Source: Lepidodermella squamata (lineage: Eukaryota > Animalia > Gastrotricha). Taken from it: a stretch of 64,000 bases of DNA. The position numbers were made by a program, and so were the translations under genes. The stretch is taken from the NCBI GenBank assembly GCA_047495785.1, contig JBLDXI010000013.1, positions 744,001 through 808,000 on the forward strand. Reading direction: 5' to 3'. Of the stretch, positions 24,038 to 46,124 are shown piece by piece. The notes beneath the pieces were generated by a model. It was not told the DNA's origin. It searched no databases and saw only the letters and a program-made list of their open reading frames with translations. Each line of letters begins with the position of its first letter. Position 1 is the stretch's first letter.

Positions 24038-25429
24038 TCAGCCCAAGGCGGCGATAGGCTCATAACGGGAAAATTGGCGCATGGTCTGATCGATCCAAGG
24101 ACGCGCAATGCAAACCTGTTATTTTTAACACATCAAAACGTGTGAAAAAAATCGCAGTCTACAAGACAGAAAAAACACGCGCATATATACGTACATTGGA
24201 ATATGCGGAGTAAGAATCAGGCCGACCGCAGCTGGGTGGGTGCGAGCTGATGCCAGCAAGAACATACCGCCCGCTATCAACGCACATCAGTGGCGAGCCG
24301 ATATCATTCTATAAAGGACAAGGTTTGTTTTTCAAGAATTAATTATTAAAAGAAGAAAGTAATGAGCTTCTCATCAATTTCTTACGTTGCATAAATCAAT
24401 ACCGCCCTGAGGATAGCCAGCGCATATGTGATCTCGGCTAAAGTTGAACATTGCCAGATTGGCGGAGGCGAATGCCAAGTGGCAGTTTCTAGCCGAAACC
24501 AGCGGAACGTAGGCCTTGCGAAGGTAAAACGGCGCCTCCTCTTCGACGCCAGGTTGCGTTGAACCCCAACCGGCAATTTCCAATCTGCGCTGCTCTTCAT
24601 TCGTGCACGGCGATTCACAGGCAGAACTTGGCAAGCAAATCGGCTGAGCCACGTAATTGGAAAAATCAAAGGTAACTGTTCCAAAATAATGGTATTCATC
24701 AAGCCGGTTATTGTCAGCGAAATACCTGGAAGCTTCAACAAGCCGAAATTGTACGCATTTGTCGCTGAATTGAACATCGGATGAATGTGAACGTCAGAGT
24801 AGCTTATTGAGAATTTATTAGTCCTGTTTCCGTTGAATACTGATTCCACGGAAAGGGCAGTATTTTCTGCTACCGTGACCACTATATTGCCCTGGTAGGG
24901 GCCAGATTGGAGGCAAGATGCCGGCGTCAAGATCCATTGAGTGTCAATGATTGAACCTGTGCAAAAATACTTTCCCCTTGAACTAGAATCAAACAGAACC
25001 CGGACCATCCAAGGATATTCATCCTATATTACGAAGGATTATCAAAAATGAGGGACTTTGAGTCGCGGTTAATTACGATCTTAGCCAAATCGCCTCCCAC
25101 TAGGTTGCTGCGAAAAAACTGGGTGTTTCGATTACCAAGCGGAAGTCCAGGATTATAGTATTTCTAGTGCAAACAAGTTAAATTTTTTATATATTCTATC
25201 AGCAAAATCGATATCTAACGGTGTGGCCGCATTCAGGTTGAGTTGGATTCAACGCTGCTGGGGTATAGGCGACATTTTTTATATAGCTGACAGTCGGCTC
25301 TGTCTCTTGAACGTAAGCGACCGGTCGCGGGGTAGTAGCACCTGATTGCCAGCCGTTGAAAGACGAGCATGCTAGTGAACAAATCGGCCACGATATAAGC
25401 AACAGCCAATCAATGAGAAATCGAACCAT
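24038..25429 (-). CDS. SP1: S1A serine protease homologue, catalytically dead
   Basis: Spliced model. Signal peptide ending SLA|CSS; CGHTKYY; SN|LVGG; TPASC (His57 lost), YNFGLLKL (Asp102 to Asn), CNNDIGSPL (Ser195 to Ile). Confidence 0.85.
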
Positions 25430-25561
25430 GTCAAAAATTAAGAAGAAATCCTTGCGCACGTTTATTATAAAGGGAAATTGCCCAAGGCCTAGCAGTTTTT
25501 ATTTCACTTTGTCGGAATCAAAATAGCGGAGTAGAAATATTTTTAGGATTTATTGTCATAA

Positions 25562-27311
25562 TTAACCGGTCGAGCCAACAACAGCCCCGCTTATTTGCGT
25601 TATCCAGCTTGTGACTTGGCACACTTTTGAGTAAATGCCGGGATAGCCGTTTTTCCCACAGCCTGAAAAACAGCGACAATTATTACCGGTTGGAATTGTC
25701 CAGAAATTTTGTTCACTCACCATAACTGTAGGAAGCTATTCCACAGACTTTGTAATATCCGTTCTCCATCGACATCAATGGGCTTCCTTTATAAGTAAAA
25801 ATTGTTTAAAAAACGCCTTCAATTATGTTTTATCAGCTTTCATACCTAAATCACCAGCACAAATTCCGACTTTCGACAAAAAAGATCAAGAGTGAAATTA
25901 AAAAATCTCAGAGTTTTTAAGGCTATACCTCCACCGCCTGACTGACCGCTGCACATCATGTTGTCCTATTGTTGGCAAAATAAAAATTATGGATACATTA
26001 AGGATACGCCACCTACCGTTAAATAGATTAAACCACCCAATAAATAAGTTAGGCGGCACGTCGAAGCGTCGATTACTTGGATGTAAGCACGTTGAAGAAT
26101 GTTTGATGTCGTTGAATTCCCTACGAACCGAAATCAGAGCTACCCCCTTTTTTGTTAATTTTTGTTCACCTACCATCCCTATTAAAATATTAGTAATTTC
26201 TAGTCTTTTAACGAAATTGAAATTAAACTCACTGAGTTGATCCCCAGCCTGAGAAAGAATTTAAATACAAGAGAATTATGCCATGACAGAGAATACAAAT
26301 CTGAGTTGAGAGTTGACTTACCTGCTGTGTACACGTACGAATTGGCTGTACAGCCATCGGAACAGGAAGTCGGCAAACAGATCTTCTGTACCGTCCAATC
26401 AGAGACAAATGAAACATTGGCTGAATATTTACAATTCTAAAAATTGGGTTCGATTATTGGAAGAATGGGACTTACATTGCAGCTGGATAAGGGCGAAATC
26501 GTAGTCCTTGGTAGATGCTGAATTTAAAATGTTTATACTAAAGTATATTCCTTGCCAGCTTCAACAAAATTACCTGAATAGGAAGGATGGAAGACGATGC
26601 GGGACGAGGTTAGTGTGAATTCTCCCGTATCCTTAACCGAAGCGTCATGGTCAGCAAAATAAACGGTAACCGTTGTCCTATATTTCGAATGAAAATTTAT
26701 CAGAATTGAGCAACCATTTTCAAATAGGCTCACGTTGTGTTTTTTGCACTAGCTACACAGGTAGCTGCCGTTAAAATCCATCCGGTTTCAACGATGGCTC
26801 CAGCGCACAAGCCATAAGTGTTGTCAGAAAGCAGGACGAGAAGCCTGACCAGCCTGTAACACTAAATAGATTCCTGGAGTTCGGGGAAAAAGCGCAGCTT
26901 ACCAGGGGTACATATTTTGATCAGCACTGATGCCACCTTAAATGAAAATTGTCAAATTCGAAATCGAAAATCTTAAACTTGAATGTTCTTACCCACAATA
27001 CCACCGGGATTCTCTTGCGTGTTCTTGTAGTACTTGGAATGCCCACATTTCGCTGTTGCTACGGCGGGCGGGGCAGGTGTCACTGATGGAGTAATTATTT
27101 TAGTAAGATACGGAACAATTAAGGTGAATAAATGAATACCCGATTGCGCCGGTGTAACCCCCGATGACGCTGTAAATATGTACCAAAAAATTAGCAGATG
27201 TTGTGGTTAACTATAATAAAAATTACTTGGAGGAGCGACTACCGCGCAGGAATCGATGACCTCGATTTCATAGACCGCAATGGCAATAAGGCAAAACAGA
27301 AATAACTTCAT
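25562..27311 (-). CDS. SP2: S1A serine protease homologue, catalytically dead
   Basis: Multi-exon. IDS|CAV; CGHSKYY; PGG|IVGG; TAATC (His lost), DYDFALIQL, CAGDLGSPL (Ser195 to Leu). Confidence 0.85.
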
Positions 27312-27694
27312 TCTTTCTAAATTATATTACGATTCTGTAGCGTGAGAAGGTTTATTGTTTCCGAAGTTTCGATGACGGAAGTCTAGCATCTCAGTTGATC
27401 TTCTCTATATTTAAAACCGTAGACTTTGGTTACGTATTACGTGAGAACCATTTTTGTTGGCATTGTAGCTGTGAACAATAGCTTCTCGAACGTACTTTCT
27501 CGCGTGGGAATGGGTGTTTTATATAGCAACCAACTTATTTGTTTGCTTTATTTTCCCAACTTATGATTCATGCCATTTCATCATCATGCGAATGATTTTA
27601 TTTCATACCACATTTCCTCAAAGTATTGATATAAAATGAACATGATTGAATAGAAAAATAAACGTCAACTTGAGATACTCGGCAATCAAAATCA

Positions 27695-29062
27695 CTAATA
27701 CTTCGCGACAGCATCTGAAATCCATGAGATAACCTTACAAACACGGCTGAAATTAGACCAAGTTCATTGCGTGATTGATTGCAGCAGTTTTTAACAAACT
27801 TACGCGTAAACTCCGTAAAATCCAATCCTCGCGCAGCCCATACCAAATGAAGTCACTCCGCATAGCTTGTAGTAACCGTTTTCAGCTACAACCAACGGCC
27901 CACCTTGAAAAGGGTACTCTATAGCGAGGCCATAAATATATAAACAAAAATTACCTGAGTCACCGAGGCAAGTATCCACTCCGCCGTTAGGATAGCCCGC
28001 GCATATCATGCGATCTGTGATTTTCGACCCAGCCCCTGATAAGTAGTTGCTCGCACAAGTTGTTTGATCTATAATGTTAACATAGGCCTTCTGCTGGTAT
28101 CTAGAGGCTGAATTGCTTGCTAAAAGTACACCATGATAGAATCCTAAATTAAAATTCAGATTCCAGCTTTACATTCACTCGTTGTTCCCCAGCCACTGAT
28201 GTAAGCGATCGTCCCAGCTGCGCAACCGTCGTTGCAAGACGAAGGCAGACAAACAGCTTGTACGGCCCAGCTAGATGTCAACGAAACCGCACCTGTTACG
28301 GACTTTCATTATAGCCTTGCATAACTTGACAAACTTGAAAACTTACTTGCAAGCTTGAGTAAAGCAAAGTCGTAATCATTTGTGCTTGAGGAATACGATT
28401 CGTGGATTACAATCCTCAAAACTCCTAACGAGTATTCGCCGGTATCAGATGCCGATTTGTCCCAATCACCGAAAATCGCCGTAATGTAGCTTGCGTTAAA
28501 CGCTGCCCTAAAAATATTACGACAATTTGTAAAATGAATACGTATTAAATTTTAAAACTAACTTGGCACAATGCGCTGCAGTTAGAAGCCAGCTGAAACA
28601 TAGAAAAACTCGATAGTTTTGATATTCATGATCTAAAACTAGTCGGCAAACTTGGCATTAATCAAAGTCGCCCCGCAAAGATCGCTGGTCCCATCTCCGA
28701 GGCTTATCTTTAGTCGAACGAGCCAGGGGTATTCATTCGGGGCCGCTGTTATGCCTCCAACAATTCCCGATGCGGCTTGACCTGGGTTCGAATTTGAGCT
28801 TGAATAATAGTACTTATTATGACCGCACGTGTTTGACGTTGTAGCTGCCTGGAATAAAGGTATATATATCGAAATTTTCGATTGATTTTAAATTTACAGG
28901 AACGCTTGGTAGCTGACTTTGAGGCGGGGAGTCACCTCCGGGTGTTTTGCTGAATGGCGAACTTGTTGACGACGACGAAGCTGTTATGCATGCCAGCAAT
29001 ATCTGCAGCTGCGATTCAGTCGCCAACAGGAAGACCAGCAACAACTTTTTAACAGCCAACAT
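27695..29062 (-). CDS. SP3: trypsin-like serine protease, intact triad
   Basis: LLA|CIT; ASG|IVGG; [27 protein letters not shown] (Asp189). Confidence 0.92.
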
Positions 29063-29601
29063 ACAAGCTATACGTATGCAAGTTTAAAACAGTGTTTCGC
29101 GTTATGGTTAAGGATCACTATACGCGGCAGCCTACAGAGGATTTTGTGTACTAGTATAAGCAAACAGTATGAAGCGTGGGCAGCGACGACAAAAAATGGA
29201 TTTTTGAACACGCCGGTACATGAGATCGGCTGTCTTGTTAAGGTGGTATCATCCGTTGACAGTTATAGGCCATGTTTGTCTTTTTCTCAGCGCCACTAAG
29301 GAATATAACGCTGTGCTAAGTTAGCGAGTGTTGAAAAAACCTCACCACCGCCCCACACTTCGTGCACATTATTTCGCGTATATCGACGACGGTCTGTGGT
29401 GTGGTGTATAACTACGTTACGCTTACCAGTGTAATTGATTGTGCGTTCAGGAACATTTTTTTCAACAGTCGTGTTCCTGCGTAGGTATTCCTATGAAAAC
29501 ATGCCTATTTTGGCCTTGAAAGTCTCCTCTCACGTTCCATTTTTAGTAATAGGTAAATTTCATTTTCAGTTATTGACATTGAACAATCGAGAATCACTGT
29601 T

Positions 29602-30752
29602 CTATACGGCATTAGTTTTTATCCAACTAGATACTGAACAAATTCTTGAGTAAACGCCAGGATAGTTAGATCTAGCGCAGCCGTTGCCGAAACTCACAAT
29701 GCCGCATAATTGGTAGTAACCATTGACAGCAGTCATAAGTGGCCCGCCTGAATCACCTTGGCACGTGTCTACACCGCCACTTTTCCAACCTTGGTGGGAA
29801 CAAATTGAATCTCGAAATTCGGTGAAATTCAAACTATTATACCTGCGCACATCATTCGATCGGTTATTTTCTCGCCAACAATAGCATAGCTATTCGCACA
29901 GGTAGCGGTATCCATTAGGTAGACACTGGCGTGTTGCATTACATAGGGCTCCAAGCTGTCGCCCTCTGCAACTAATCCCCACCCTGCGATGTAGGCAACC
30001 GAGCCAGCGTTGCACCCATCGGAGCAGTCAGCGGGTAGACAAATCTTTTGCGTGGTCCAACTTGTAAAATTTAATGGACCTGTTTGAATGAATTTGGGAC
30101 AAAAATAATTAGGGAGTATAAAAATCACTCTCTAATTTTAGCAGCGCGAAGTCATAGTCGGAGGTATCAGAGTTATAGTTTTCGTGAATAACGATTTTTG
30201 ATACTTTCTTCGTGTACTGCCCTGCATCGTCTGCATTTCGATTGTAATCAGCCATAGTTGCTGTTACTGAACTAAAATTTCGCAAGATTTGATTGCAGAG
30301 CTTCAAGATGCAACTCACATGACCTGCCTGAAATAAGGGTTATGCGTCCATAATTATGAAATCAAGAAGGAATTTTACTTGACGCAATGTGCCGCTGTAA
30401 TCAACCATGATTCGCTAATTATTGACGAACCACAGGAGGCAATACCAGTTGAAAATGTCAGGGTCAGTCTTGCGAGCCTAAGGAATTCGGAATTAAGCCC
30501 AAAATTAAGCTTTCAGCGTGCAAACCAAGGATATTGATTGGTTAAGGTGTCCTCCCCACCTACAACGCCAGTCCCAGGATTATTGGTCAAGTAGTAATAT
30601 TTGGTATGGCCGCATTGACTCCCGAGGGCTGGGGGTAAGGCTGGCATGGCTATGGAGCCGGCTTTTCGAGTCTCTGGAACACTTTTACTACAACTACGAG
30701 CATATCGGCACAACAATGCCAGCAAGAAAACCGATACTAAGATTGTTCGCAT
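29602..30752 (-). CDS. SP4: trypsin-like serine protease, intact triad, 6 exons
   Basis: Exons 30526-30752, 30379-30477, 30319-30327, 30129-30271, 29853-30079, 29602-29789. ARS|CSK; GTG|VVGG; [27 protein letters not shown]. Confidence 0.93.
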
Positions 30753-31093
30753 TTCAGCTGATTGATCGGTGCTTGTTGCAAAAGAAGGCTGTTAAGGCGA
30801 TATGTGTTCATGAATTACAAAAGTTAATATACGCCTTCTTACTACAACTACGACACGAAATTTACGTAACGTGAAACAGCTTATAGCGCCAAATTATTGC
30901 CATTTTATTAAGTATTCATCCATTTTTTGCATACAATAATTCTTGTAGTTTTTCACACAACGTGTGCTGTCGAACGTGCTAGTTCAAAACATGGCGCAGA
31001 AGCAGTGTAAAGACAGATTTATAGCGTGGAAGACCGGAAAACGTGATTTTCCACCACGTGGAAATTAGGCGAATTTCATTGGCACGACACCTT

Positions 31094-32291
31094 TCAAGAT
31101 GTTGCTGAAGTTGATTTTATCCAGTCTAGCACGGAGCAAACTCTGCCATACACCCCCGGGAAGTGATACTTGGCACAGCCGAAGCCAAAGCTGGTAACGC
31201 CACACAGCGTTGCGAAGCCACTGGTCATCGTTACCAGCGGCCCACCTGAATCTCCTGAGCAAGCGTCTACGCCGCCATTGTTCCAACCTTAGTTGGAAAA
31301 TTAGATTCAAGAACTTGAAATTCGATAGCGACTAACCTGCGCATAGCATTCGATCAGTTATTTGTTGACCTACTGGGCCATAAGACTTGGAGCAATCGAA
31401 CGTATCCCGCAAGTAAACGTAGGTGTGCTGTAGCATCTGTGGCGATACTGTGCCTCCGGCCTGGACAACGCCCCAACCTGCTATGTATGCAACTGAACCT
31501 GCGCTGCACCCGGTTGAGCAGTCTGGCGGCAAACAAACTTTCTGGATTTTCCAGTCAGAGAAATTCAAGGAATCTTGTTGATAAAGAGAAATCCATGTTT
31601 TCAAATGTTTTTCGAAAATATGTTATACTTGAAAACTTGATTAGAGCAAAATCATAGTCTGAGGTTGCCAAGTTGAAGCTTGGATGAACAATAATTTTGG
31701 AAATATTAAGGTTGATTTCTGTGCCTTCGATTTGCAATCGATCGTGATCGCCAGCAATTGCTGAAACAGAGCTTTTTTGATCAGAGTTCATCCAGGAATA
31801 TCTTGCTGAAAGCTGAATGCTTACTTTGCATCCCTAGTTCAAGAAAAACCATTTTATATTAACTTTTATTGAACATTTGCGGTAAAACCTACTGAACGCA
31901 ATGAGCAGCAGTTATAAGCCATGAATCACTTATGATTGACGCTCCGCAAGTGCTTTGTCCCGCGGCATACGATAATTCGAGCCTTACAATCCTATAATTC
32001 CAAAAAAGTCATAGGTACCTAGATAAACGCATTAGGTTACCATGGATATTGATTTGGTAGAGCGTTCTCGCCGCCTATGATACCAACTCCTGGCTTGTTA
32101 CTCGAGTAGTAATACTTACTGTGCCCGCATGTCGAGGCAATAGCTGGAGGAAGGGCGGGCATGGCGATGCTGCCGGCTTGCCTTGTAACAGGCAAAGTCG
32201 ACGAGCATGCTAGGACTTTAAAAATTTCAGCCAAGGCGAGCACCAGCTCTATAGCAGTTGGGTACAACAGCTTTCTCTTTAGAACATTCAT
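31094..32291 (-). CDS. SP5: trypsin-like serine protease, intact triad
   Basis: VLA|CSS; GVG|IIGG; [27 protein letters not shown]. Shares [12 protein letters not shown] with SP4, suggesting a closer duplicate pair. Start codon choice inferred. Confidence 0.9.
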
Positions 32292-32388
32292 CACAATAAA
32301 AACATGTTCGCCGTGAACTGAAGCAACCTCAGTGTGAAGGAGTGGGAAAATGCTCAACATAAACATTTTTATTTCCGAAAACGTCGTA

Positions 32389-33608
32389 TTAAAAAGTGTT
32401 GCTTTTGATCCAGTCTACCACAGCACAAACACGTGAATATACGCCAGGATAGCCAGCTCGGGCACAGCCTACGCCGAAACTCACGACGCCGCAAATTTTG
32501 TAGAACCCATCTTCGACGACCATGAGAGGTCCGCCTGAATCTCCTGAGCATGTATCCTGGCCGCCGGCAGCTACGCCTAAAATAAGACATTGAAAAAGCA
32601 ATAAATTGGATTTACTTTCAAAAACCTGCACAAGTCATCCTATCCGTGATGGTCGACACAGAATAAGCGGCCCTGCAAACAGCTTGGCTGTAAATGTTTA
32701 CTATATTTGACTGCATTATTTTCGGTAAAACGGAGGATTCATTCAACAGGCCCCAACCGGCAATGTAAGCGTACTGACCTGAAACGGAAAGAATGATGAT
32801 TCCGTTCCACATTACAATTAACTAACCCGCTCCGCAGCCATCAGAGCAAGAACTTGGCAAACAAATTTTTTGGGCGCTCCAACTGCTGAAACTTAAAGCG
32901 GCTGTTAAAAAGAAAAAACGCGATGCCCAAGATTGACAATGTTGAGCTTCATCATACCGTCTAGCCTAAGTAGAGCAAAGTCGTAATCTTGCGTGCTCGA
33001 GTTGTAGGAGGTATGCTTGACTATGACAGACACTTTTCGAGTATATTCACCGGCATCAGTAGCCGTCTGGTCGTAGTCGGCGATGTAAACTGTAATTCCT
33101 CTTCAATTTTTTTATCCGATGACTGAGCTTGGAAGTCGAGAAAAACTTACGAGGCAAGCATTCCACTTTAAAAATGATGATTTTTACGAATTAATACAGA
33201 TTAATTATGACTTACTTGATGCAATGAGCTGCGGTTAGGACCCAGTATTCACCAATAATACTTCCCCCACATAAGCTCGTTGAAGATCCCGACGAAATTG
33301 AAAGACGAACCAGCCTAATTTTCAGAAAGTTAGGACGATGCGAAAGTTGTCCGAGAGTTTCACTCAAACCAAGGGTATTGATTAGGCCTAGCATTTTCTC
33401 CACCAACTATTCCATAACCAGGTAAATCTGCCGCAAAGTAATACCTGGTATGGCCACAATTGGAAACTATAGCTTGAGGCGGTGTCGGTGTTGATATGCT
33501 GCCGCTTATTCTAGTCAGAGATGACGAGGATGTACACGCCCAGTTTCTGTCGAAAAACACCGCTAGTATCAGTGTTAATTTCAACAGAAACCTTGATAGT
33601 AGATGCAT
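32389..33608 (-). CDS. SP6: trypsin-like serine protease, intact triad
   Basis: NWA|CTS; GYG|IVGG; [27 protein letters not shown]. Confidence 0.92.
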
Positions 33609-33973: not shown

Positions 33974-35452
33974 TTAAAGACCAGTCGTGCTCTTGATCCA
34001 CTCTCTGACTGTGCAAACTCTCGACTGGGAAATGCAACAACAAAAGTCAACTTTTCAGCAGAAATTTAAATAGCTTACGTATACGCCGTAGTAGCTCGAA
34101 CGACCACAACCAGAGCCGTAACTCGTAACTCCGCAAAGCTTGTAGTACCCATCTTGGACGACCATTAAAGGTCCACCGGAGTCACCTTGACAAGTGTCGT
34201 AGCCACCTCCCAGCGTTCCTATTTGCCGAAATGAGTTATAATTCTGTGATTATTTCGATATTTTTGGACTCACCAGCGCAGGTCTGGCGATCCGTGAATG
34301 AAGATCCATATTGAGACACGCATATGTCCCGAGGTACTATTTGCACCCAGGTTTGCTGTAGCCACCTGCTTCCTGATTTCGCAGTTTCAGCCGTTAAACC
34401 CCAACCGGCTATTTCAGCGTAAGTATATTGGCCACAGCCATCGTCGCAGGATGACGGCAAACATATCTTCTGGGTTAACCAATCGCTGGAAAAATCCAAT
34501 TTCGCTATAACATGTCATTTTTGATAGAAAAAGCTATTTAAACAATGAAAATATTGGATTACTTGATGTTTTTAAGAGGGTAAAATCGTAATCTTGACGC
34601 GTTTGATCGTAATTCGGATGAATTGTGAACGCTGACATTTTAACGGTATATTCGCCAGAATCTGTTGTAGTTTGATCCCAGTCCCCGAATACTCCGGTAA
34701 TCGAGCTATTTGTTAGGAATTATTAATTTAATTATAAAAGGTTCCATCCAATTGTTACCCAGCATCTGTGACGCCTCTGTTAAAAATGGTTTCCTTTAAG
34801 TTATGTTTTATCAATATCGCAAATAAACTCACTGCATGCAGTGCGCTGCTGTCAGCAAGTAGCTTTAAGATAAAAAAGATGAATAAAAGTGAAAACATGG
34901 CTTGGTTAACTTACTTTTCGCTAATGATTGTCGCTCCGCAAAGGTAGAGAGTAGAGCCGACTGTTATTTTCAGCCTAACCAGCCTAAAAAAATATTGTAA
35001 AATTCTCTACTTTGATGTTCCATGCTGGCTGAAACCAACCATGGATATCTGAAAATTTGATATTTTCAAACATATAATGACTGCAATTTTAAAGATGATT
35101 TTTACTGATTTTGTGTTGCATTTTTTCCACCAACTACGCCAGCTGAACCGGGCTTGTTGTAGGCGTAATAGTTCTTGCTATGGCCGCAGCTAGAATTTTG
35201 AGGCTTTATCGTTGTCAATGTCGCGTTTCTGTCAACAGCAGGCATTGTTGCGAGAACTTTCGTCGTAGTTGACTGGCCAGGGGCTGTTGTTGCTGTTGGC
35301 GATGAGCCTTGTGAGGGCGACGACCCAGCTGGGCTTGCAGGCGGCTTGTTATTATCGTCAACGCCTCTCGAAAAGCATGCATTAACCGAGGGCAGTGACA
35401 CCAGGACAAGTCCAATCAATAAAGCGCTGCATTTTTGGGGTATCATAACCAT
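33974..35452 (-). CDS. SP7: trypsin-like serine protease, intact triad
   Basis: VNA|CFS; S/T/P-rich stalk; SAG|VVGG; [26 protein letters not shown]. Confidence 0.9.
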
Positions 35453-35867
35453 CAATATAAATTGGATTTTAAAAGTTTCACAGGAGAGAGATATTTCTGC
35501 TATTTCTTGATCCTGTTCTTCGTGCTTGCGTTATTTGCTTATCAGAAAAAACTCGCTGAAAGTGAAACGTAAAATATTTTACGTTATAGTTACCCATGTG
35601 GGAAATGAAAAAATGTTTAACACCCTACTTAATTTAATGGAAGAAACGTCACGACAAACGTGCGTGCGTAAAAAAAGCGGAATTTCATCCCGCTTATATT
35701 GACATGTATGAATTGGATGTCTGAAGTCCAAAGTTCTAGAGTTCTAGCAAGCTGGTATACCTTGGTAAAATTTTAGTGGCAAAGTAAAGCTGCACCGATT
35801 TTAACGCAATTCATCTTCATCAACGTCAATCAGCGACGACAATTTTTCAGGAGCCAGCGTTGAAATA

Positions 35868-36674
35868 CCGTCATTCGGGGCTATCGCGGGATACGGGGCT
35901 ATTCGGTAAAAAGTTTGTTCAATTAGTAGATTGAGGTTTACTCCAAAACTATAAAGTCAAAGTCGACAAGTTTTTGCAGGGAGCTACCTCGATAGATGAC
36001 ACTTATTCTATCAAAAGTATGAGTTCAAAGAGTAAACGGTTCTGAAGCTGCAGGCTCACCTTTCAGGTGTAAGTTTAACTCAAGAAAACCCATGTGTTGC
36101 ATTGAATTACCTGGACCGGAATAGATCAGGCTCTGGACCAAATGAGCTGGGTTGTTGTTATGTTTCTCGGTAAATTACCCAGACTTTGAATTTAAGATGC
36201 TTGATAAACTTGTAATTAAGCTTTAAGCTTTATCGGGGAAAGGCTGATATTGCATTTGGCAATGACTATTAAAAATTAATTGATTTACTGCGAATTAAGG
36301 AAAAACTGTCTAATTAAAAGCCAACTATTTGCATGGCATAAGTTTGTTTGCATAAAAACGGCGGTTATTTTGCTGTAGAAAAAAATAATTTAGGCGAAAA
36401 AAGCTAAAAAACGAACCCTTGTGGAATCGAACCGCTGACCTTTTAATGATCTCGCCATAGACAACTGTGATAAAAAACCTTCCTTGCTTATTTACTAATA
36501 TTAAGATGTCTATATATGTGTAAATAATAGCCCCACACCTGTCCGAATAGCCCCATCCGTGGGGCTATTCGGAATACGGGTGCCATTCGAATCAGGACCC
36601 TTGGAAACGTGTAAAAAAAGCGAAAAAACCAGGGGGTCATTTTTTGACGCATACCAAATAGCCCCAAATGACGG
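35868..36674. mobile_element. Non-autonomous DNA transposon (MITE), Tc1/mariner-pogo/Tc2-type ends, 807 bp
   Basis: Terminal inverted repeats CCGTCATT(C/T)GGGGCTAT starting at 35868 and ending at 36674, flanked by TA on both sides (35866-35867, 36675-36676). Internal copies of GGGGCTATTCGG in both orientations. No transposase ORF. Confidence 0.8.
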
Positions 36675-36876
36675 TAAGTTTTACTGGTGAAAATATGTAA
36701 CAATGATTTTTCAGAACTTTACACGAGGTAGAGATGTGGTATTTCGGGCATAAAATAGGCATAGCGAATCATAGAGCGTAGAGCAAGTTAAGAATGGTTC
36801 AGACCCCGAACTCATGTCTCGTATTAGATTTATAAAAGCTTCTGGAGGTACGCTAATGAGCTGACGTTGAGGTATT

Positions 36877-38561
36877 TTACGCGACTGGTGCATTAAAATT
36901 GATCCAATCGATGACGGAGCAGACCTGTTAAATTGGAGAATACATCAGGCCATTGGCGATCAGTGGACATTTCAATGGTTTCATACCCGCGAGTAAACTC
37001 CGTAATAACCTGCGCGTCCGCAACCGTTGCCAAAGCTGGTAACGCCGCAAATTTTGTAGAATCCATCTTCGACGGTCATCAGGGGACCTCCGGCATCTCC
37101 AGTGCAAGTGTCAACACCTAAAGTTAATAACTGTCAATAGCTGATATCTAAAACGTTTCATCGCTACTTACCACCGCCGCTGTAGCCTAAAATGAGAAGT
37201 GAACAAATTTTGAACAACTTTTCAACAGAAATAATGAGCTCATTCTTACCTGCGCAGATCATACGATCGCTGATTTGAGAAAGCGAAGATGCATACTGTT
37301 TAGTACAGTCATCTTTATCAGCGATCTTGACGTAAGCTGTCTGCATGAATTGCACAGCAGTAGAGTTGGCTGGGAACGAAAAAAAAAAGATTATAGCGTA
37401 GGGATGGCTGGGGTGAATAAGTACCCTCGGAAGTTGCTCCCCAGCCCGCAATGTATGCGATTTTGCTGACGCCACATGATGCGGCGCAAGTCACTGCTGT
37501 TGGCAGGCAGATTGCCTGCACCTTCCAAGAAGAGCCGGTATCAGTTAGCACGAGAGCCGCTATCAAAAACTCAGCATTAATAACTGCTATTTTCAATGTA
37601 ACGCGACATACTTGACAAAGTGAGAATAGCGAAATCGTAGTCGTTGTTGATGGCACTGAATCAATGTATCTCAATTATTGATGGCAAACAGAAGTTATTA
37701 ACCAACTTGTAGCTTGGATGGACGAGGATAGACGCGATGGCGACTTGATATTCCCCACTGTCAGTATTAGCTGAGTCCCAGTCAGCGAAAATGGCAGTAA
37801 TATCACTTGAACGTCAAACACATTATAGCTCTCGCGCAGGTTGAATAATAAAGTTATTACGTGATGGAATTGGCATATCTGAATTAAAATTAGATGGGTG
37901 ATTATAGCAATGCAGCGATTTAAAATATGTAAGAAAACCTACTTGGCGCATCTTGCTGACGTTAGAAGAAATCTATTATGATCATTAATGCCAACTGATT
38001 AATATGAGATGAAGCTGAAGTTGTTATGCTTACCGTTTTTGGATGATAGAGGCGGAGCAAGTTCGAATAATCGTCCCATTGAGAATTCTCAGACGAACAA
38101 TCCTGTTTATTATTCTCATGTTGCTTGGAACGCGAAGCGTAACTGCATCTTACTTACCAAGGGTACCTGTTTTATTTAGACGAATGAAACGATCTAGGTT
38201 AATAAATACGTTTATAGCGACTTACTGGTTCGGCAAAGCGGTAGTACCGCCGACAATCGTCGCTGATCCCGGATTGTTACCGCCGTTGTAATAAACTGTG
38301 TTCCCACAAGCCTGTTTTACAGCGGTTGGTGAAGCTGGCGTTAGCAGCTGATTAGGAGGTTTGGAAGTAGTAGTAGTAGTGGTTGTAGTTGTGGTCGTTC
38401 TATAAAAAATCCATCTATAATAGTTCTCGGAAAGCTAGTTAGGGAAAATTTTACGTCCTCACTGTCGTTGTCGTGCTGGGAGGGTCCGGCTGGCAAGAGC
38501 GAGCCATTTGAGCGAAAAGGCCCAAACCCAGAATCAGTAAAGCCACCCGATTATTCGTCAT
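36877..38561 (-). CDS. SP8: S1A serine protease homologue, catalytically dead, ~13 exons
   Basis: ARS|CQP; Thr-rich stalk; SAT|IVGG; TSARC (His57 to Arg), [20 protein letters not shown] (Ser195 to Ala). Confidence 0.87.
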
Positions 38562-39102: not shown

Positions 39103-40655
39103 TCATCGCCATCCATCGGCCTCTAAGACACTTTTTATCCATGGCAACATTGAGCATATCTGTAACAGGCAAGTTAATCAAGTGCAACGAAGGCTATCAA
39201 ACTAAATACCCTAGTGTAGACTCCGAATACTCCTAAAGGGGAAACAAAATTCACAAGCACTCATCGCGAGATGAAGAAAGTTTTAGGGATAACAAACCTG
39301 CTTTTCCTATAAAAAATAGCAAATATTAATAGAACTTAGAAATATAGGTATTTCCTTACCGCATCCATCGCCGAAAGATGTCACGCCACACAAGTGGAAA
39401 TAGCCATTTTCCGCTGTCATCAATGGGCCGCCTTAAAACCAAATGCTCTATAATGCCAATTTAAAAAATGACTCATGCTTCTCTCACCTGAGTCGCCAAA
39501 ACAAGTGTCAATGCCTCCATTATTCTCGCCAGCACATATCTATTAGAAGACCCTATCAACATCGAGTCGAAAACAGAGCAAACAAACCATGTTGTCCGTA
39601 ATTTGCTGGGCCAAAGGTTCGAACGCCTTGCGGCAATAATCGCGCGCGGTTATTGGCACATAGGCTTTCTGTAGTAGTTTCGACGCTTTCAGCTCGTCAC
39701 TGCTCCTCGCGCCCCAGCCAGCTATGGTGGCGACTCCTCGATCACCGCAACCGTCATTGCACGACGAAGGTAAACAAATCGGCTGCACCGAAGACAAAGA
39801 ATCTTCATCGTCCAGTTGTTTCAGCAAGTTTTCTATTGCGGAAAGGAAAGTTTCAATCGGAAGGAGATTAACTTATTCGGCTCAAACTTTCAACAACAAG
39901 AATAGCGATATCGAATTCATTTGTGGCGGACGAGTAATTCGGGTGCAGCAGGATGCTCACAACAGGAACGACCCACTTGTAATAACCAGCCTTGACCTTT
40001 TCCCCGAGGTCATGCTCGCCAACGACTGCTAACACATTGCTATTAGAGGATAAAAAAGTTAGGATTTTTCCAACATATCAGATGCAAGTTCGAAGTACTT
40101 TGGCGACGCTAAGACATCGATGACACAATGGGCTGCTGTAATCATGTGCTTTTCGGAAAGAATGTTGGCGCTGCAAAGCTGAGTTAGATTGGTAGCAGGA
40201 TGGGTGATTTGGAGCCGAACCTTTCAAGCAAAAAATGTCAGAAATTCTCTTGTATTGACGAACTATGCTGTCAGTATTACAAGCCAAGGAAATTCGTTGG
40301 GAAGAGCTGTTACCCCTCCGACGATGGATGATGGCTCGTTGTCCCCAGAATGACGGTAGTATCGGCTGTGGCCACATTTCGAAGCTTTAACCGGTGCTAT
40401 GCCATTGTTTTTTCTTTGATTCAGGTCTTCTCGCTCCACGTTTGATAACGGGTTTCTCCCCAAGGGCGGTCGATGCTTGTTTTTGTAAGGATCGCCGTAA
40501 GGTCTCTTAAAGTTTCCGAAGCCCTGGCTGCATGCCATAGCTGTCTCTACGGCAATCGCGGAGATAAGGAGCACAATTAGCCCACATCGGGTACATCCAT
40601 TTCCCCGTGCGCTCTGCTTTTTTACCGCAAAACTGTTTATCAAATTAATCAACAT
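39103..40655 (-). CDS. SP9: trypsin-like serine protease, intact triad
   Basis: AMA|CSQ; basic stalk; CGHSRYY; PSS|IVGG; TAAHC, FDIAILV, GIDTCFGDSGGPL; 9-nt micro-exon at 39298-39306. Confidence 0.88.
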
Positions 40656-41017
40656 CAGCTACAATTTAGTATACTACAAAAAGTTGCTTTCTTTGTGTTT
40701 CACTTAACCCTGCTCATGATGCACACGGGAAGTTTTATTGTTTATTCGCAAAAAACGACTCGCTGTTTGTTGTGCTCGTCACTATATATGCTATACGACA
40801 TGCGACGTGTGAGAGCTTCCTTTCGTACCGATGGCCGGCACTCGAGGAAATTAAGCTATAAGCACCAACTCATGAATGACGACAATCCAGCTGCAGTTCA
40901 CGCAAAAACAAAGATAATGCTATAGGTATACGCAATCCTCGCCAAGCTCTTTCTTTGAGCTTTTCGAAATAGTTTCATCAGTGCATACAGATGAATGACA
41001 GTTTGAGGCGGTCGCCT

Positions 41018-42667
41018 CTAGGTTTGAATATTTCTCCTGATGAAATTCACGAGCACTTCATTCGCGTTCTGCCCGCATAGCGGAGTGAATGTGCTGTAAA
41101 ACTGAGATCTTGGGCAATTCTGAGAAGAAAAATGATTAAAATGAAGTCTTGAGGTGAAATTCCCATCTCCTTTACCTGAGCAAAAAGTGTGATGGCAACT
41201 AGCTCGTAACTTCCATCACTCCTTAGACAAACTAGGGGGCTGAAATTACAGAAAATATTAGCGCTTGGATTCGATTCGGACACTGATACCTTCCTGTGTC
41301 ACCTTGGCAAAGCGGAGTTTTGGTCGTTCCGGCGCACATCATGGTATCAGCCACCTTTTGAAAGGCTATTTCGTTGATTCTATTCGGGCTCGGCGGGGTC
41401 GCTTTACACGTTTCCAAATCAATAGGTGTTTGCTCGATCTGAAAAGAAAAAAAAACATATATCAGCCGATAATTTTAGTGGAAAACGCAGCTGCACCTTT
41501 TGCAAATTCTGCTTAGGCTGGGATGCATCGGAGTCTGCAATTTGAAATTTTTTGCCTCCTTCTACATGGATTTAATGCTATTTTACCAAGAGATCGACCC
41601 CATCCAGAGACAAATAGCCTCGCTGTAGTGTTAAGGTTGTTGTAACAGCTATTTCACAAGTTTAAATTATAGATGAATTAAAAACACCGAAGCCAACCTG
41701 GACGAACAGCTCTCCGGAAGACAAATTGGCTGCAGCCTCCAATCTGTGAAGCCGCCGACTATCGGATCTGAAATCGAAAGTTAAAAACAATCATGGTCGA
41801 GACCTAAAATATCCCTCTCACTTCTCATTCTTAACATTGCGATATCGTACAGGTAGGTTGAAGGAACGTATTGAGGATGAAGCAGGATATCTGTCGATAC
41901 AATATCAGTAGTTCGAAATGCTTCACCTCCATCTCGTTTGCTCAATCCTAGATAGGCTGTCATCGTAGCTCTAATTAGCAATCAATAGCATGAAGCCTAC
42001 ATGTAAAATTCAAAAAATCTACCCGGGTACGTTTTTCACTTTGTTGGCACATGATGCTGTTGTAACAATCCATCCTTAGTAAAACAAATAGGTTCAAATG
42101 GACTTTCGAATTTGATATTAAACTTACGGTCACTAACCACAATTCCAGAACATTCTTGGGTATCAAGAGTCTGGGTGTTGGTAATCGATAGTAGAACCTG
42201 TTAGAAATAAGGCTTAATTTCCCGAGCGAAGTTGGTCGAACTAAGAAATCCTTACATGCCAAGGGAACTCTCGATCAGCTGCATCATTTGAGATCTATAA
42301 ATTTGAAGAACAAATTGAACATTGATAATCTAAAATGCATATAGACAAACGGGATCTGGGAGTCCACCGCTGTAGTAGATATTTTGTCCACAAAATCGAC
42401 CGGGTAAGATGGTGGGGCCGAATGTGGATGTTGTTCCAGAGGTTTGAAAGGCGCCTCCGAATCTTTAATTTGTTAAAAATATATTAATAAAGGTAACGAA
42501 TTACGAATTTAGCATTACGATTGGCCTTGTGACAGGTCGTAGTTATCATAGTCATCAGCATCACGAAACATCTCCCATTCGGGAGGCTGGCGACTCGGCG
42601 GAACACAGGCTAACTGAATTTGAAGTTGCCATGCCAAAGCTAATGTCAACACGATGACGATTTTCAT
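41018..42667 (-). CDS. SP10: divergent S1A serine protease homologue, catalytically dead
   Basis: QLA|CVPPSRQPPEW; CGQNIYY; no IVGG; TTASC (His lost), YDIAMLRM, CQGDTGSPLVC (Ser195 to Thr). Confidence 0.82.
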
Positions 42668-42971
42668 TTTTCGCAATGGAAAATGGAAAATATTAGGAAG
42701 AAGCCAAGGCCCTTTACAAGAGCGTATTTCAAGACATAACGTCGTCGCGGTGTTAGAGCGGTAAATTCCACGGCTTCACTAACTAGCCGCTGTTTTACAA
42801 TTTTTTCCCGAAACAGTGCGATTCAGAATTACAGGTGTTAAATTTGAAACAAATTTTTATTACTCAGAACGTGTTTTATTACGCGATTGTGTGAAGATGT
42901 GTCAGGCGTCCTCCGAGCAAACATTATCAGTATCAGTTTTTTTCTGGCGCCAAAATACAAATAGAAACATG

Positions 42972-44469
42972 TTAGATGTTACGTGCTCGTTGAATTGTAC
43001 TTTGTATCCAGGACAATACACCGGAGTTACAAACCCTGCTAAACAAACCAACACGATGATTCATTGGCGATTTCGCACAGCTCTGTTTGGCGGTTATGAA
43101 TTAAATAAAAAATTCATAAATTTTAATTTATTTACCTTCTCAAAAAGCTTCGGTACTGCTAAGCCGACTAGTTCGTGTCTGGCCTTGGTTAGACAGGTCA
43201 AAGGAGCTCCACTGTAAAAAAATACCAAGAAAATGCCGATCATCGATGTAAAAACGTTATGATTTTACCTAAACGTGGAACATAAACTCGGCATGTCATC
43301 GAGATCATTATTTTTCGAATTCAGATCCACCCCAGCGCAGAGATGGGATGAGCAGTCGTCAGATATTGAATAGCAAGATTCGGCCGGAAAAATTCTCAAA
43401 TTCCTCTTAATGGGAAATTCATAAACGTGAGTATGATACAGTAATCGATCGCTAAAATTCTTTACAATTTGAAGAATCTCGCTTGATCTGCCGTGGCCCA
43501 CTTGTCTGTAGTACCCAGATAATAGAGTTGCCCCGGATTCATCTATGCAGCTTCAAACAGCATTTCCCAAAACATTCGTTTAAAAGAATTTACCTATGCG
43601 TGCAGTTCTCGGGCAAGCAGACCGGCTGAACTCGCCAGTCTTCTGTAAAGTCTAATTTTGCTATAAAAGAAATTTAGAAATTTAGTATCGTAGGTATAGT
43701 CTGGACCTTTTTTCATAAAAAATTACAGCTCATTTTAAGCAATGCGAAATCGCCATTGTTTTCGAGGTGGAGCTCAATTTGCGAGATTTTTCGATACAGC
43801 TGATTTGACATTACTTTGCGGTCGAATTCGCCCAGGATTATGGTTACAGCGCTATTGATAGTTGATCATAAATTCATTCTGGATACAATCGAAACGAAAA
43901 ATACTTCAAATTCCCGTTAGCGAGGTTTGCACATGTTGCTGTAGTGAGGATCCACTGACTGTAAAGCAAACCCGTAGGTACATTGTTTTGGGGCAAGAAA
44001 AATGTACTTACTCATTGATGACAGCTCCAGCACATTCCTCATTCTGAGGATAATCTTGAATGAGGACCGTCGCATGCCACGGGGCTTGACCTTCGAGAGC
44101 ATCTGGGTATGGCTGGTGGCTGGTTCCGACCTTGTAGTACTGGTTAATTCCACACCCGGATCCGGGGACAAACCGCGGAAAGTAGGGGGTTATCAAAAGT
44201 GGAGTTGTTTGTCGGGTAGTTGATGTCTTCGAAGAAAACCTGCCACTTGCGAGCAAGCTATTCAATATTTCCAACGTGAAACATCACAAGTCTTCACTTA
44301 TATAAACCTACAATTCCTGAGATAAATTAGCCCTTATCTGGCCATCAGGGTCTGCTGTATCATCGATATCGTCGACAAATAGCTGCCACGGGGAAGGCTG
44401 TCTTGCCGGTGATAAGCAGCCATCGCAAGTTAAAGTGAATGCAATCAGCAAAAATATAAAAGGTGACAT
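42972..44469 (-). CDS. SP11: divergent S1A serine protease homologue, catalytically dead
   Basis: CDG|CLSPARQPSPW; CGINQYY; no IVGG; TTATC (His lost), GDFALLKM, CSTFSGAPLTC (Gly193/Asp194 lost). Confidence 0.8.
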
Positions 44470-44680
44470 GATAGTTTACAAGTTGATAAATATCTCATAC
44501 ACACTCTCAAAACGCGCGAATTTAATTGTTTTCGGATGTTCGGATTAATTAATTTTTATTATAAAAAAATATCGTCCCGCAACAAACAGCAAAAAAACAT
44601 GTTTTCACCTTGAATTTCTTTGTAATAAATTCGTAATGACTGAATATTTGTAGTCATGGGTCATCGGGATTTTTTGACGA

Positions 44681-46124
44681 TCAAACAGCTGTTGCTTTGA
44701 TCCAGTTAACAAATGAGCAAACCTGGAGCAAAAAAACATAAGAAAAAATGAGATTGACTCCTTGACATGGGATAACTTACCCTCGTGTAAACCCCATAAT
44801 AGCGAGCAAGGCCGCATCCCTGAGGAAAAGAAGTTTTTCAAACTCCCGGATGTATGGAATTTTGTGTTTCACCTGTCCGAAAGAAGTCACGCCACCGAGC
44901 TCGTAGAATCCTTTTGTATTACAAACCAGAGGTCCGCCAGAATCACCCTAGTTAGTTGAAAGGGAAAGGTGCTTTTGGCTTGCATCACTACCTTCTCTAT
45001 ATATTACCCTGCACGAGTCGACCTTGCCTTCCTCGAAGCCAGCGCAAATCATTCTTACAGTTGAATGAAGAATTTATGGTGGATTATAATTATTATAGAT
45101 GCGTTTGAAATATACCTATCACTGATCTGAGTGTTTACGTAGCTATAGCTGTTGGCGCATTGAGTATTCGTCACAATGGGGACCCAAGCTTTTTGGAGTA
45201 TGTTTGCCCCGTTGGAAGCGCCTGTAAATAGCCTAGAGATACAGGGAACCAAAAAAACGTTTCACTTACTGTTTGAAGTGGTGCCCCACCCTGAAATCCA
45301 AGCTACAAAAAGAGAGGGAGAATACCAGGCTGAAAGCTGAAAGCTGATTTTCGATTTTAAAATTACCAGGAGCGCCGCTTTGACAAGCACTAGCGGAGCA
45401 TGAATCCGGCAGGCAGATCGGCTGAATTGCGCCAGTGTAAGACACTCGACCTTATTTTTTCGGAAATCAACAATGCTACCTGAAATTTAGTAACCATCAG
45501 TCCTACTTGATGCCTGAATCAAGGCTATGTCGTAATCGTTAGGATTCGGACCGGATGCATTGTAATACGGGTAGACAACTATCTGTGACGCGCTCACGGT
45601 ATTTTCAGTCGAATCCACCACGCTTCTGTCGTGATCACCGTAGACAATAACAACGGATCTATATCGCAATAAATTAGTTAAATAAAATCAAAGGGATAGT
45701 TAATTGTGCTACACAGACCCAGATCCGCCGGCCGCAGATTTGGCACAATGCGCTGCTGTAACAATCTAAAAATGCATTAATTATGGAACTCGAATCGGGA
45801 GAAATCGGGATGAATAACCCATCGATTGTTAACAACGGCACCTCCGCACAGGTATGTTTCCGAACCGCTGACAATTCTCAGCCGAACTTGCCACGGGAAT
45901 TCGTTCCTCTTGGCGTCTACACCTCCAACAATGCTGGAAATCTCGCCAGTGTTGTAGTAAATTGAATGGCCACATGTAGAAACACTTGGCGACGGAGCGG
46001 CTGGAACATTACTCGACTGGGACGACGGTACTGATGGGCTTGAAGATGAACTACTTGTACTGCAAGCTATCGAAAGATCGAAAAATGTCAAAGTTGCCAC
46101 GAAAAGGACAAAAATTTGCCGCAT
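44681..46124 (-). CDS. SP12: trypsin-like serine protease, intact triad
   Basis: SIA|CST; Ser/Pro stalk; CGHSIYY; ISS|IVGG; [28 protein letters not shown]. Confidence 0.92.

What the first reader, a model, noticed from the sequence alone, without database searches (positions are those of the whole stretch)
24038..46124. Twelve tandem proteases all start their mature chain with a Cys: candidate Hedgehog/Spitz-style lipid-anchored protease system
Seen: in 12/12 paralogues, otherwise unalignable N-termini have a hydrophobic leader ending in a small residue followed by Cys (SLA|C, IDS|C, LLA|C, ARS|C, VLA|C, NWA|C, VNA|C, ARS|C, AMA|C, QLA|C, CDG|C, SIA|C). A variable, mostly S/T/P-rich stalk follows, then a CG..(Y)Y motif. 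Mature SP4 has 13 Cys; 12 can be paired (1-122, 42-58, ~128-232, ~131-210, 168-182, 191-220), leaving the N-terminal one free. Known: an N-terminal Cys exposed by signal peptidase is the substrate for HHAT/Rasp palmitoylation in Hedgehog and Spitz, and the Cys1-Cys122 bond keeps the pro-chain attached after activation. Inference: these are surface- or mucus-tethered proteases held on a mucin-like stalk by an N-palmitoyl anchor (or by inter-chain disulfides), an anchoring mode I do not know for S1A proteases. The Cys is also kept in the dead copies.
Basis: partly seen in the sequence, partly recalled or inferred. Interest (0 to 1): 0.88.

Follow-up and report, generated by a model that had tools for sequence, protein, structure and literature searches.

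The report
Tandem proteases with free N-terminal cysteine
Twelve neighbouring trypsin-like protease genes of an unidentified invertebrate, and their relatives in other species, all place one extra unpaired cysteine right where the signal peptide should be cut; it looks like a conserved attachment point at the tip of a flexible stalk, but its chemistry (disulfide cross-link or lipid) is unknown.

Summary
I built spliced models for 12 minus-strand S1A genes (24038-46124). All are intact ORFs; 7 have an intact catalytic triad and 5 are catalytically dead. Each has a Met, a short hydrophobic leader, A/S/G at -1 and then Cys. Ten more N-termini from related metagenome contigs show the same pattern, so the Cys is present in 22 of 22. 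The (-3,-1) signal-peptidase rule fits the site directly before the Cys in 20 of 22 sequences, and fits no other register in more than 10 of 22. Catalytic domains are only 25-57% identical, and the leaders and stalks do not align, so the Cys is under selection. Eleven of 12 mature chains have 13 Cys. Twelve of these sit in six conserved positions that match S1A disulfides, so the N-terminal Cys is left over. AlphaFold2 predicts the first ~76 residues of a relative as disordered. The Hedgehog-style palmitoylation idea is not supported by the one determinant I could test: only 7 of 22 have a basic residue in the first seven positions. The bacterial lipobox is also not met. My best reading is a covalent tether through the N-terminal Cys, most likely an intermolecular disulfide, with lipidation as a minority alternative. 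This needs experiments.

The parts
44681..46124 (-). g1: S1A protease, triad HDS, 311 aa, 10 exons; leader MRQIFVLFVATLTFFDLSIA|C; +1 Cys codon 46062-46064
42972..44469 (-). g2: dead S1A paralogue (His57->T, no GDSGG), 344 aa; leader ...FTLTCDG|C; +1 Cys codon 44416-44418; intron in stalk 44311-44258
41018..42667 (-). g3: dead S1A paralogue (His->S, Ser195->T), 332 aa; leader ...WQLQIQLA|C (rival site ALA|W 8 aa upstream); +1 Cys codon 42605-42607
39103..40655 (-). g4: S1A protease, triad HDS, 360 aa; long leader (41 aa) ...AVETAMA|C; +1 Cys codon 40530-40532; charged stalk
36877..38561 (-). g5: dead S1A paralogue (His->R, Ser195->A), 326 aa; leader ...FAQMARS|C; +1 Cys codon 38493-38495; poly-Thr stalk with intron 38454-38400
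33974..35452 (-). g6: S1A protease, triad HDS, 339 aa; leader ...SLPSVNA|C; +1 Cys codon 35375-35377
32389..33608 (-). g7: S1A protease, triad HDS, 298 aa; leader ...FFDRNWA|C; +1 Cys codon 33534-33536
31094..32291 (-). g8: S1A protease, triad HDS, 307 aa; leader ...AEIFKVLA|C; +1 Cys codon 32205-32207
27695..29062 (-). g10: S1A protease, triad HDS, 323 aa; leader ...SQLQILLA|C; +1 Cys codon 28988-28990; orthologue-like relative P0118 (VAS|C)
25562..27311 (-). g11: dead S1A paralogue (His->T, Ser195->L), 337 aa (stalk model uncertain); leader ...YEIEVIDS|C; +1 Cys codon 27246-27248
24038..25429 (-). g12: dead S1A paralogue (His->S, Asp102->N, Ser195->I), 350 aa; leader ...SWPICSLA|C; +1 Cys codon 25367-25369

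Best explanation
This is a taxon-restricted subfamily of secreted trypsin-like (S1A) proteases and pseudoproteases. The signal peptide is cut immediately before an invariant extra Cys. That Cys then sits, with a free alpha-amine and thiol, at the tip of a disordered 25-70-residue stalk. The stalk stays tied to the catalytic domain by the chymotrypsinogen-type Cys(CG motif)-Cys122 disulfide. Shown: the conserved junction, the odd Cys count and the predicted disorder. Inferred: the unpaired Cys is a covalent tether point. I think the most likely chemistry is an intermolecular disulfide. That would give homo- or hetero-dimers among the paralogues, dead copies included, or a cross-link to a Cys-bearing mucus or matrix partner. 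The result would be proteases held or multimerised on flexible stalks.
For: The Cys is invariant in 22/22 N-termini: 12 window paralogues and 10 relatives from at least two other genomes. Residue -1 is A/S/G/C in 22/22, and the (-3,-1) rule is satisfied in this register in 20/22 against at most 10/22 elsewhere. The paralogues are old (25-57% identity) and their leaders and stalks do not align. In the g1 and g10 orthologue pairs, only the Cys is shared around the junction. The mature chain has 13 Cys in 11/12 copies. Twelve of these fall in conserved columns that match Cys1-122, 42-58, 128-232, 132-201/210, 168-182 and 191-220. The stalk contains no other Cys. AlphaFold2 on relative P0077 gives pLDDT below 50 for residues 4-76 and a confident protease domain. 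There is no Pfam domain in the N-terminal part. The feature is family-specific: the few other plausible secreted proteins in the window and loci start with Q or E, not C. The dead copies keep the Cys, so its role does not depend on catalysis. From general knowledge: unpaired Cys in secretory proteins usually signals disulfide-linked assembly, and N-terminal Cys plus stalk plus globular head is the design of collectins, ficolins, adiponectin and resistin.
Against: No partner is identified. The conserved syntenic neighbour has an even, conserved Cys count of 14. Known N-terminal oligomerisation cysteines are not held strictly at +1. The strict +1 position here points to chemistry that needs the free N-terminus, which favours lipidation or another 1,2-aminothiol reaction. 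Cleavage was judged with a rule, not with SignalP or data, and g3, g8, g10 and g11 have plausible earlier sites. The gene models lack RNA support.
Confidence: 0.4

Rival explanations
1. The exposed N-terminal Cys is N-palmitoylated by an HHAT/Rasp-type acyltransferase, as in Hedgehog and Spitz. This would give a lipid-anchored protease on a stalk.
For: The Cys is held exactly at the predicted +1 position in 22/22 sequences, even though insertions and deletions are frequent elsewhere in the stalk. Hhat needs a free N-terminal Cys (PMC8061759). Residue 2 is never Lys, which that review reports as not tolerated at this position. The stalk plus retaining disulfide resembles anchored proteases. There is no C-terminal TM or GPI-like tail in the models.
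Against: The review states that an N-terminal Cys alone is not sufficient and that a basic residue is required within the first seven residues. Only 7/22 sequences have one, and nothing downstream of the Cys is conserved. None of the 84 human non-Hedgehog proteins with Cys at +1 has been shown to be an Hhat substrate. The presence of HHAT in this unidentified animal could not be checked. A literature search found no precedent for S1A proteases.
Confidence: 0.2
2. The Cys has no tethering role. It could pair inside the chain, for example taking Cys122 or the CG-motif Cys as partner and leaving a different Cys free. Or it could be a conserved P1' or folding feature, or a relic of a chymotrypsinogen-like ancestor whose chain began with Cys1.
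For: Chymotrypsinogen itself starts with Cys1 directly after its signal peptide (general knowledge). Relative P0113 has the signal peptide followed almost directly by CGRNYY, with no stalk. The disulfide map here is inferred by alignment only.
Against: An odd count of 13 means that one Cys is unpaired whatever the pairing. A relic would not survive in 22 lineages whose surrounding residues are saturated with change. AlphaFold2 places the segment in a disordered region away from the domain.
Confidence: 0.15
3. The leader is not cleaved before the Cys. It could be cleaved at an earlier site, or it could be an uncleaved signal anchor. The Cys would then lie several residues inside the mature chain or next to a membrane helix.
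For: My crude scan finds equal or better (-3,-1) sites upstream in g3 (ALA|W), g11 (AIA|V), g8 and g10, and 2 residues downstream (ACS|) in g1, g4, g8 and g12.
Against: Only the register before the Cys works across the family (20/22), and residue -1 is small in 22/22. There would be no reason for that if cleavage were elsewhere. The hydrophobic cores are 10-13 residues long, which is too short for a membrane anchor.
Confidence: 0.1
4. A bacterial-type lipoprotein signal (lipobox, with diacylglyceryl-Cys).
For: There is a superficial resemblance: hydrophobic leader, small residue, then Cys (for example LLA|C, VAS|C).
Against: The lipobox [LVI][ASTVI][GAS]C is matched by only 1 of the 22 junctions (VAS|C). 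The genes are eukaryotic, with spliceosomal introns, and sit among metazoan genes. Lgt/LspA are not known in animals (general knowledge).
Confidence: 0.01

Closest known systems
Hedgehog / Spitz N-terminal palmitoylation by HHAT (Rasp)
   Same: A Cys is exposed as residue +1 by signal peptidase, and the position is strictly conserved.
   Different: There is no conserved downstream motif. The basic residue required within the first seven is absent in 15/22. The cargo is a protease on a stalk, not a signalling ligand. The enzyme's presence is unknown.
Chymotrypsinogen-type Cys1-Cys122 propeptide tether (S1A)
   Same: The fold is the same. A Cys 15-25 residues before IVGG (the CG..YY motif) and Cys122 are both invariant, so the pro-segment should stay attached after activation.
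   Different: In chymotrypsinogen that Cys is itself residue +1. Here a second, extra Cys occupies +1, and a 25-70 aa stalk separates the two.
Type II transmembrane serine proteases and polyserases (hepsin, TMPRSS2/9, matriptase)
   Same: The stem region is linked to the catalytic domain by the Cys-Cys122 disulfide. The closest solved catalytic domains include TMPRSS2/6/11D, plasma kallikrein and factor XI. Relatives in contig L006 are true polyserases, and L010/P0078 carry SRCR domains.
   Different: There is no transmembrane helix. The leader looks like a cleavable signal peptide, and the only candidate anchor is a single Cys.
N-terminal Cys cross-linked oligomers (collectins, ficolins, adiponectin, resistin)
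   Same: An unpaired Cys near the mature N-terminus, then an extended non-globular stalk, then a globular C-terminal head. This design is used for interchain disulfides (general knowledge).
   Different: Those cysteines lie a few to about 20 residues from the N-terminus, not strictly at +1. The head domains are lectin-like or C1q-like, not proteases.
Bacterial lipoproteins
   Same: A hydrophobic leader, a small residue, then an invariant Cys at +1.
   Different: The lipobox consensus is not met, and these are eukaryotic intron-containing genes.

Membership tests
S1A (chymotrypsin-fold) serine proteases, Pfam PF00089 | Trypsin domain detectable by profile | tested here: met
   PF00089 at E=6.6e-51 for relative P0077 and 3.7e-29 for P0043; g1 exon 1 at 7.4e-07. 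Best PDB hits are plasma kallikrein, FXI and TMPRSS catalytic domains at E~1e-43.
S1A (chymotrypsin-fold) serine proteases, Pfam PF00089 | Catalytic triad His57/Asp102/Ser195 | tested here: met
   Intact in g1, g4 and g6-g10, all with Asp189. Broken in g2, g3, g5, g11 and g12, which are pseudoproteases.
Chymotrypsinogen-type two-chain zymogens | Propeptide Cys and Cys122 both present | tested here: met
   Alignment columns 151 (CG motif) and 311 (ICLP) hold Cys in 14/14 sequences. The bond itself is inferred by homology.
Chymotrypsinogen-type two-chain zymogens | Activation cleavage after a basic P1 before IVGG | tested here: not met
   P1 is G, S or T in all 7 intact copies.
HHAT/Rasp substrates | Cys at +1 after signal-peptide cleavage, with a free N-terminus | tested here: inconclusive
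   The rule-based register fits 20/22 and residue -1 is small in 22/22. No SignalP run and no protein data.
HHAT/Rasp substrates | Basic residue within the first seven mature residues (PMC8061759) | tested here: not met
   7/22 overall and 4/12 in the window.
HHAT/Rasp substrates | Residue 2 not Lys | tested here: met
   Residue 2 is S, F, P, N, L, V, Q, T, I, A or G, and never K.
HHAT/Rasp substrates | Amide-linked palmitate present; HHAT encoded by the organism | not testable with these tools
   Only a 64-kb window and metagenome contigs are available, and the organism is unidentified.
Bacterial lipoproteins | Lipobox [LVI][ASTVI][GAS]C | tested here: not met
   Only VAS|C (P0118) fits among the 22 junctions.
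Type II transmembrane serine proteases | N-terminal transmembrane signal anchor | tested here: not met
   Hydrophobic cores are 10-13 residues long and are followed by a (-3,-1) site.
CLIP-domain proteases | CLIP domain N-terminal to the protease | tested here: not met
   No Pfam hit in the N-terminal exons, and only one Cys before the CG motif.
Disulfide-linked oligomers via N-terminal Cys | Interchain disulfide through the unpaired Cys | not testable with these tools
   Supported only indirectly by the odd Cys count.

The most novel reading that the evidence does not exclude
These proteases and pseudoproteases would be the first enzymes, and the first non-signalling proteins, found to be N-acylated on a signal-peptidase-exposed Cys by an HHAT-type MBOAT. 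That would give a lipid-anchored, stalk-mounted S1A protease system whose substrate rules are looser than those of mammalian Hhat.
Probability: 0.15. Interest if true: 0.85.

Novelty: new variant of a known kind. Interest (0 to 1): 0.55.

Why it matters
S1A proteases are known to be fixed in place by transmembrane stems, GPI anchors or accessory domains. A conserved single free Cys at the very N-terminus of a stalk would be a different and very economical way to fix or multimerise them. If the Cys is lipidated, the substrate range of Hedgehog acyltransferases would widen beyond morphogens and EGF ligands. If it forms disulfides, the active and dead paralogues may assemble into mixed, covalently linked protease complexes. 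That would give a function to the five pseudoproteases kept in the array. Either way, the family offers 22 natural sequence variants around an invariant +1 Cys for testing what that position does.

Tried and rejected
1. Searching the protein database with the only long stop-free piece (g12, 213 aa) found nothing.
2. A family-profile search was swamped by generic two-domain S1A proteins and gave no named close relatives.
3. I tried to name the organism with a conserved SLC5 ORF. The best labelled hits are only 62-66% identical and are spread over cnidarians, annelids, echinoderms and arthropods. Unlabelled ENA metagenome proteins reach 73-79%. The taxon stays unknown, beyond being a metazoan that is not close to any annotated genome.
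4. Two family-specific degenerate DNA patterns (CLPxxCxDGC..GWG and CGHxxYY..YPW) found no match in the JGI metagenome contigs.
5. Literature searches for the sample accessions and for S1A proteases with an N-terminal Cys or palmitate returned nothing relevant.
6. von Heijne's 1986 weight matrix could not be retrieved. Cleavage was therefore judged with a simple (-3,-1) rule based on remembered preferences, not with SignalP.
7. I checked whether the conserved syntenic neighbour could be an odd-Cys partner. It has 14 Cys in both species, so there is no support.
8. A general habit of Cys at +1 in this genome is rejected: among SP-like ORFs in the window and loci, only family members show it.
9. 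My first spliced alignments over-split the unalignable stalks. The stalk introns were redone by enumerating GT..AG pairs and taking those of canonical 49-57 nt length.
Full report
**What is in the window.** The region is eukaryotic. ORFs are short and broken, and S1A hallmark motifs (TAAHC, GDSGGP) recur on the minus strand about every 1.5-2 kb. Stop-free segments showed 12 Met-initiated hydrophobic leaders, each followed by Cys.

I wrote a protein-to-genome spliced aligner and seeded it with a hand-built model of g9. I used it on each gene, enumerated GT..AG pairs for the introns that lie in the unalignable stalks, and fixed g1 by hand. All 12 models are complete ORFs without internal stops. 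Introns are GT-AG and mostly 48-62 nt. Each gene has its own stop codon and its own Met plus leader, so in this genome they are 12 separate genes and not one polyprotein.

**Observation check.** The junctions are SIA|C, CDG|C, QLA|C, AMA|C, ARS|C, VNA|C, NWA|C, VLA|C, ARS|C, LLA|C, IDS|C and SLA|C for g1 to g12.

An alignment of the 12 models with two full-length relatives shows 13 Cys-bearing positions:
- the N-terminal Cys (14/14);
- the CG-motif Cys (14/14);
- Cys42 and Cys58 (14/14 each), Cys122 and Cys128 (14/14 each);
- a Cys about four residues later, in SCSDGC (13/14, plus one shifted by a column);
- Cys168 (13/14), Cys182 (14/14), Cys191 (12/14), Cys220 (14/14) and Cys232 (13/14);
- one Cys that sits either near position 201 (4 sequences) or near 210 (10 sequences), never both.

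This gives six pairs by homology with chymotrypsin and trypsin, plus one extra Cys. Eleven of 12 paralogues have exactly 13 Cys after the leader. g3 has 12 in a model that is uncertain there. The stalk between the two N-terminal cysteines contains no Cys.

Seven copies keep His57/Asp102/Ser195 and Asp189, and five are dead (g2, g3, g5, g11, g12). All keep the Cys. Stalks are 25-69 residues long with S+T+P of 18-76%. 'Mostly S/T/P-rich' therefore holds for about half of them, and g2-g4 are charged.

**Is it more than shared ancestry?** The catalytic domains are 25-57% identical (median 42%), so the duplications are old. Both Cys codons are used.

A profile search of 1.84 billion representative proteins with the family-specific exon (ICLPxxCxDGC...GWG) found relatives only in ENA metagenome assemblies. 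I fetched their contigs. These gave ten more N-termini: AFA|C, AKC|C, TLG|C, IWS|C, VAS|C, VNA|C, SLS|C, CSS|C, AQC|C and SWG|C. They come from contigs of about 38% and about 43% GC, so from at least two other genomes.

Contigs L007-L009 are syntenic with the window. Two large secreted proteins (46% and 58% identical) are followed by the g1 orthologue. P0118 looks like the g10 orthologue because it shares the stalk motif [13 protein letters not shown]. In both orthologue pairs the leaders differ completely except for the small residue and the Cys.

Anchoring all 22 sequences on the Cys gives these counts:
- Cys is present in 22/22.
- Residue -1 is A, S, G or C in 22/22.
- Residue -3 is an allowed residue in 20/22.
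- Residue -2 is variable and often bulky.
- The (-3,-1) rule is met in this register in 20/22, against 2-10/22 at every other offset from -8 to +8.

That is the textbook signature of a signal-peptidase site immediately before the Cys. It also argues against the alternative sites that my crude per-gene scan found in g3, g8, g10, g11 and elsewhere. Among SP-like ORFs in the window and loci, only family members have this junction. The few other credible secreted proteins start with Q or E.

**Structure.** AlphaFold2 on relative P0077 (321 aa), using an alignment that includes window exons, gives a confident protease domain. Residues 4-76 have pLDDT below 50. This stretch covers the leader, the +1 Cys, the stalk and the CG motif. 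Pfam finds only the Trypsin domain, with nothing in the N-terminal exons. The closest solved catalytic domains are plasma kallikrein, factor XI and TMPRSS proteases.

**Mechanism.** Three things are shown: a conserved cleavage-site/Cys junction, an odd number of cysteines, and a disordered stalk that should remain attached to the protease through the CG-Cys/Cys122 pair. What the free Cys does is inference.

*HHAT idea.* The Hhat review (PMC8061759) makes four relevant points:
- Residue 2 may not be Lys.
- A basic residue must lie within the first seven residues.
- None of the other human proteins predicted to start with Cys (87 in total, including the three Hedgehogs) is a known substrate.

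Here residue 2 is never Lys. However, only 7/22 sequences (4/12 in the window) have K or R in the first seven, and no position after the Cys is conserved. The one testable determinant is therefore not met. The enzyme of an unknown invertebrate may have other rules, and Rasp and Hhat already differ.

*Lipobox.* It is matched by 1 of 22 junctions, and the genes are plainly eukaryotic, so I reject it.

*Disulfide tether.* An unpaired Cys in a secreted protein most often means disulfide-linked assembly. The layout of N-terminal Cys, stalk and globular head is that of collectins, ficolins, adiponectin and resistin (general knowledge). I therefore rank an intermolecular disulfide first, either as dimers or heteromers of paralogues or as a link to a matrix partner.

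The main argument against this ranking is the strict +1 position, which those precedents do not show. It points to chemistry that needs the free N-terminal aminothiol, namely acylation, or simply a more reactive low-pKa thiol. I give the disulfide tether 0.4, palmitoylation 0.2, no tethering role 0.15 and cleavage elsewhere 0.1. The remainder is unassigned.

**What it is closest to, and novelty.** It is a member of the S1A family: the domain, the triad in 7/12 copies and the canonical disulfides are all present. It works like a stem-tethered protease (TTSP-like logic) but without a membrane helix. It does not meet the tested criterion for HHAT substrates and is not a bacterial lipoprotein.

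I found no description of S1A proteases with a conserved free +1 Cys. The family seems restricted to an unidentified metazoan lineage. The best labelled hits to a conserved SLC5 gene are only 62-66% identical across many phyla, and there were no matches in JGI metagenomes. I class it as a new variant of a known kind.

**Limits.** The models for g2, g3, g11 and g12 are the least certain in the protease domain, and the start codons of g4 and g8 are chosen by context.

Noticed in passing
window, activation sites of g1, g4, g6-g10 (e.g. g8 around 32070-32060, g9 around 30560-30550): All seven catalytically intact copies have Asp189 (a trypsin-like pocket) but G, S or T at P1 of the activation site (PGVG|IIGG, EPSS|IVGG, GSAT|IVGG). 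They cannot activate themselves or each other in the usual way, and the convertase is unknown. The relatives share this trait (GAG|IVGG and similar).
   Followed up: partly
window g1-g12; alignment columns 408/418: The partner of the family-specific extra Cys in SCSDGC sits near position 201 in g1, g2, g3 and g12, and near position 210 in the other eight paralogues and in P0043/P0077. It is never at both. This looks like a disulfide partner that has moved.
   Followed up: partly
L006:34-5091: In a related metagenome contig the same protease type is a polyserase. Single ORFs run from the C-terminus of one protease domain through a Thr-rich stalk into the next CGH..IVGG. One gene there still begins with a signal peptide and VNA|C.
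   Followed up: partly
L010:580-2548; P0078/P0156: Some relatives carry SRCR domains upstream of the same CGH..YY/IVGG protease. An ORF just upstream in L010 also reads signal peptide then HIDA|C, but I did not establish whether it belongs to the same gene.
   Followed up: no
window 46818-51176 (minus strand) and L007:4902-9114: Two large secreted S/T/P/Q-rich proteins, one with a Sushi domain, lie directly upstream of g1. They are conserved in sequence (46% and 58% identity) and in synteny in the related contigs. The Sushi-bearing protein directly upstream of g1 has 14 Cys in both species. In L007 only one further weak Trypsin fragment follows the g1 orthologue within the ~6 kb held, so the array there may be much shorter than 12.
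   Followed up: partly
window g7-g9 stalks (about 33500-33460, 32180-32135, 30670-30620) and g10 (about 28950-28900): The stalks are not pure filler. The motif [11 protein letters not shown]-like is shared by g7-g9 and a relative in L004, and [13 protein letters not shown] is shared by g10 and P0118.
   Followed up: no
window 24726-25023 (g12); 39488-39431 (g4); 27955-27903 (g10): Intron positions vary among the paralogues. g12 has lost the intron between the His and Asp exons, and g4 and g10 have an intron inside the GDSGGP codons. Some relatives (P0043, P0077) are entirely intronless.
   Followed up: no
window 35452-36877: There is a 1.4-kb stretch without a recognisable gene between the g5 stop and the g6 start. 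It is much longer than the other intergenic spacers (98-542 nt).
   Followed up: no
window 56557-57798, 59991-60812, 61384-63138 (minus strand): Two tandem sodium:solute symporter (SLC5-like) ORFs and an ABC half-transporter ORF lie here. A protein with an IMD domain is at 5046-6704.
   Followed up: partly
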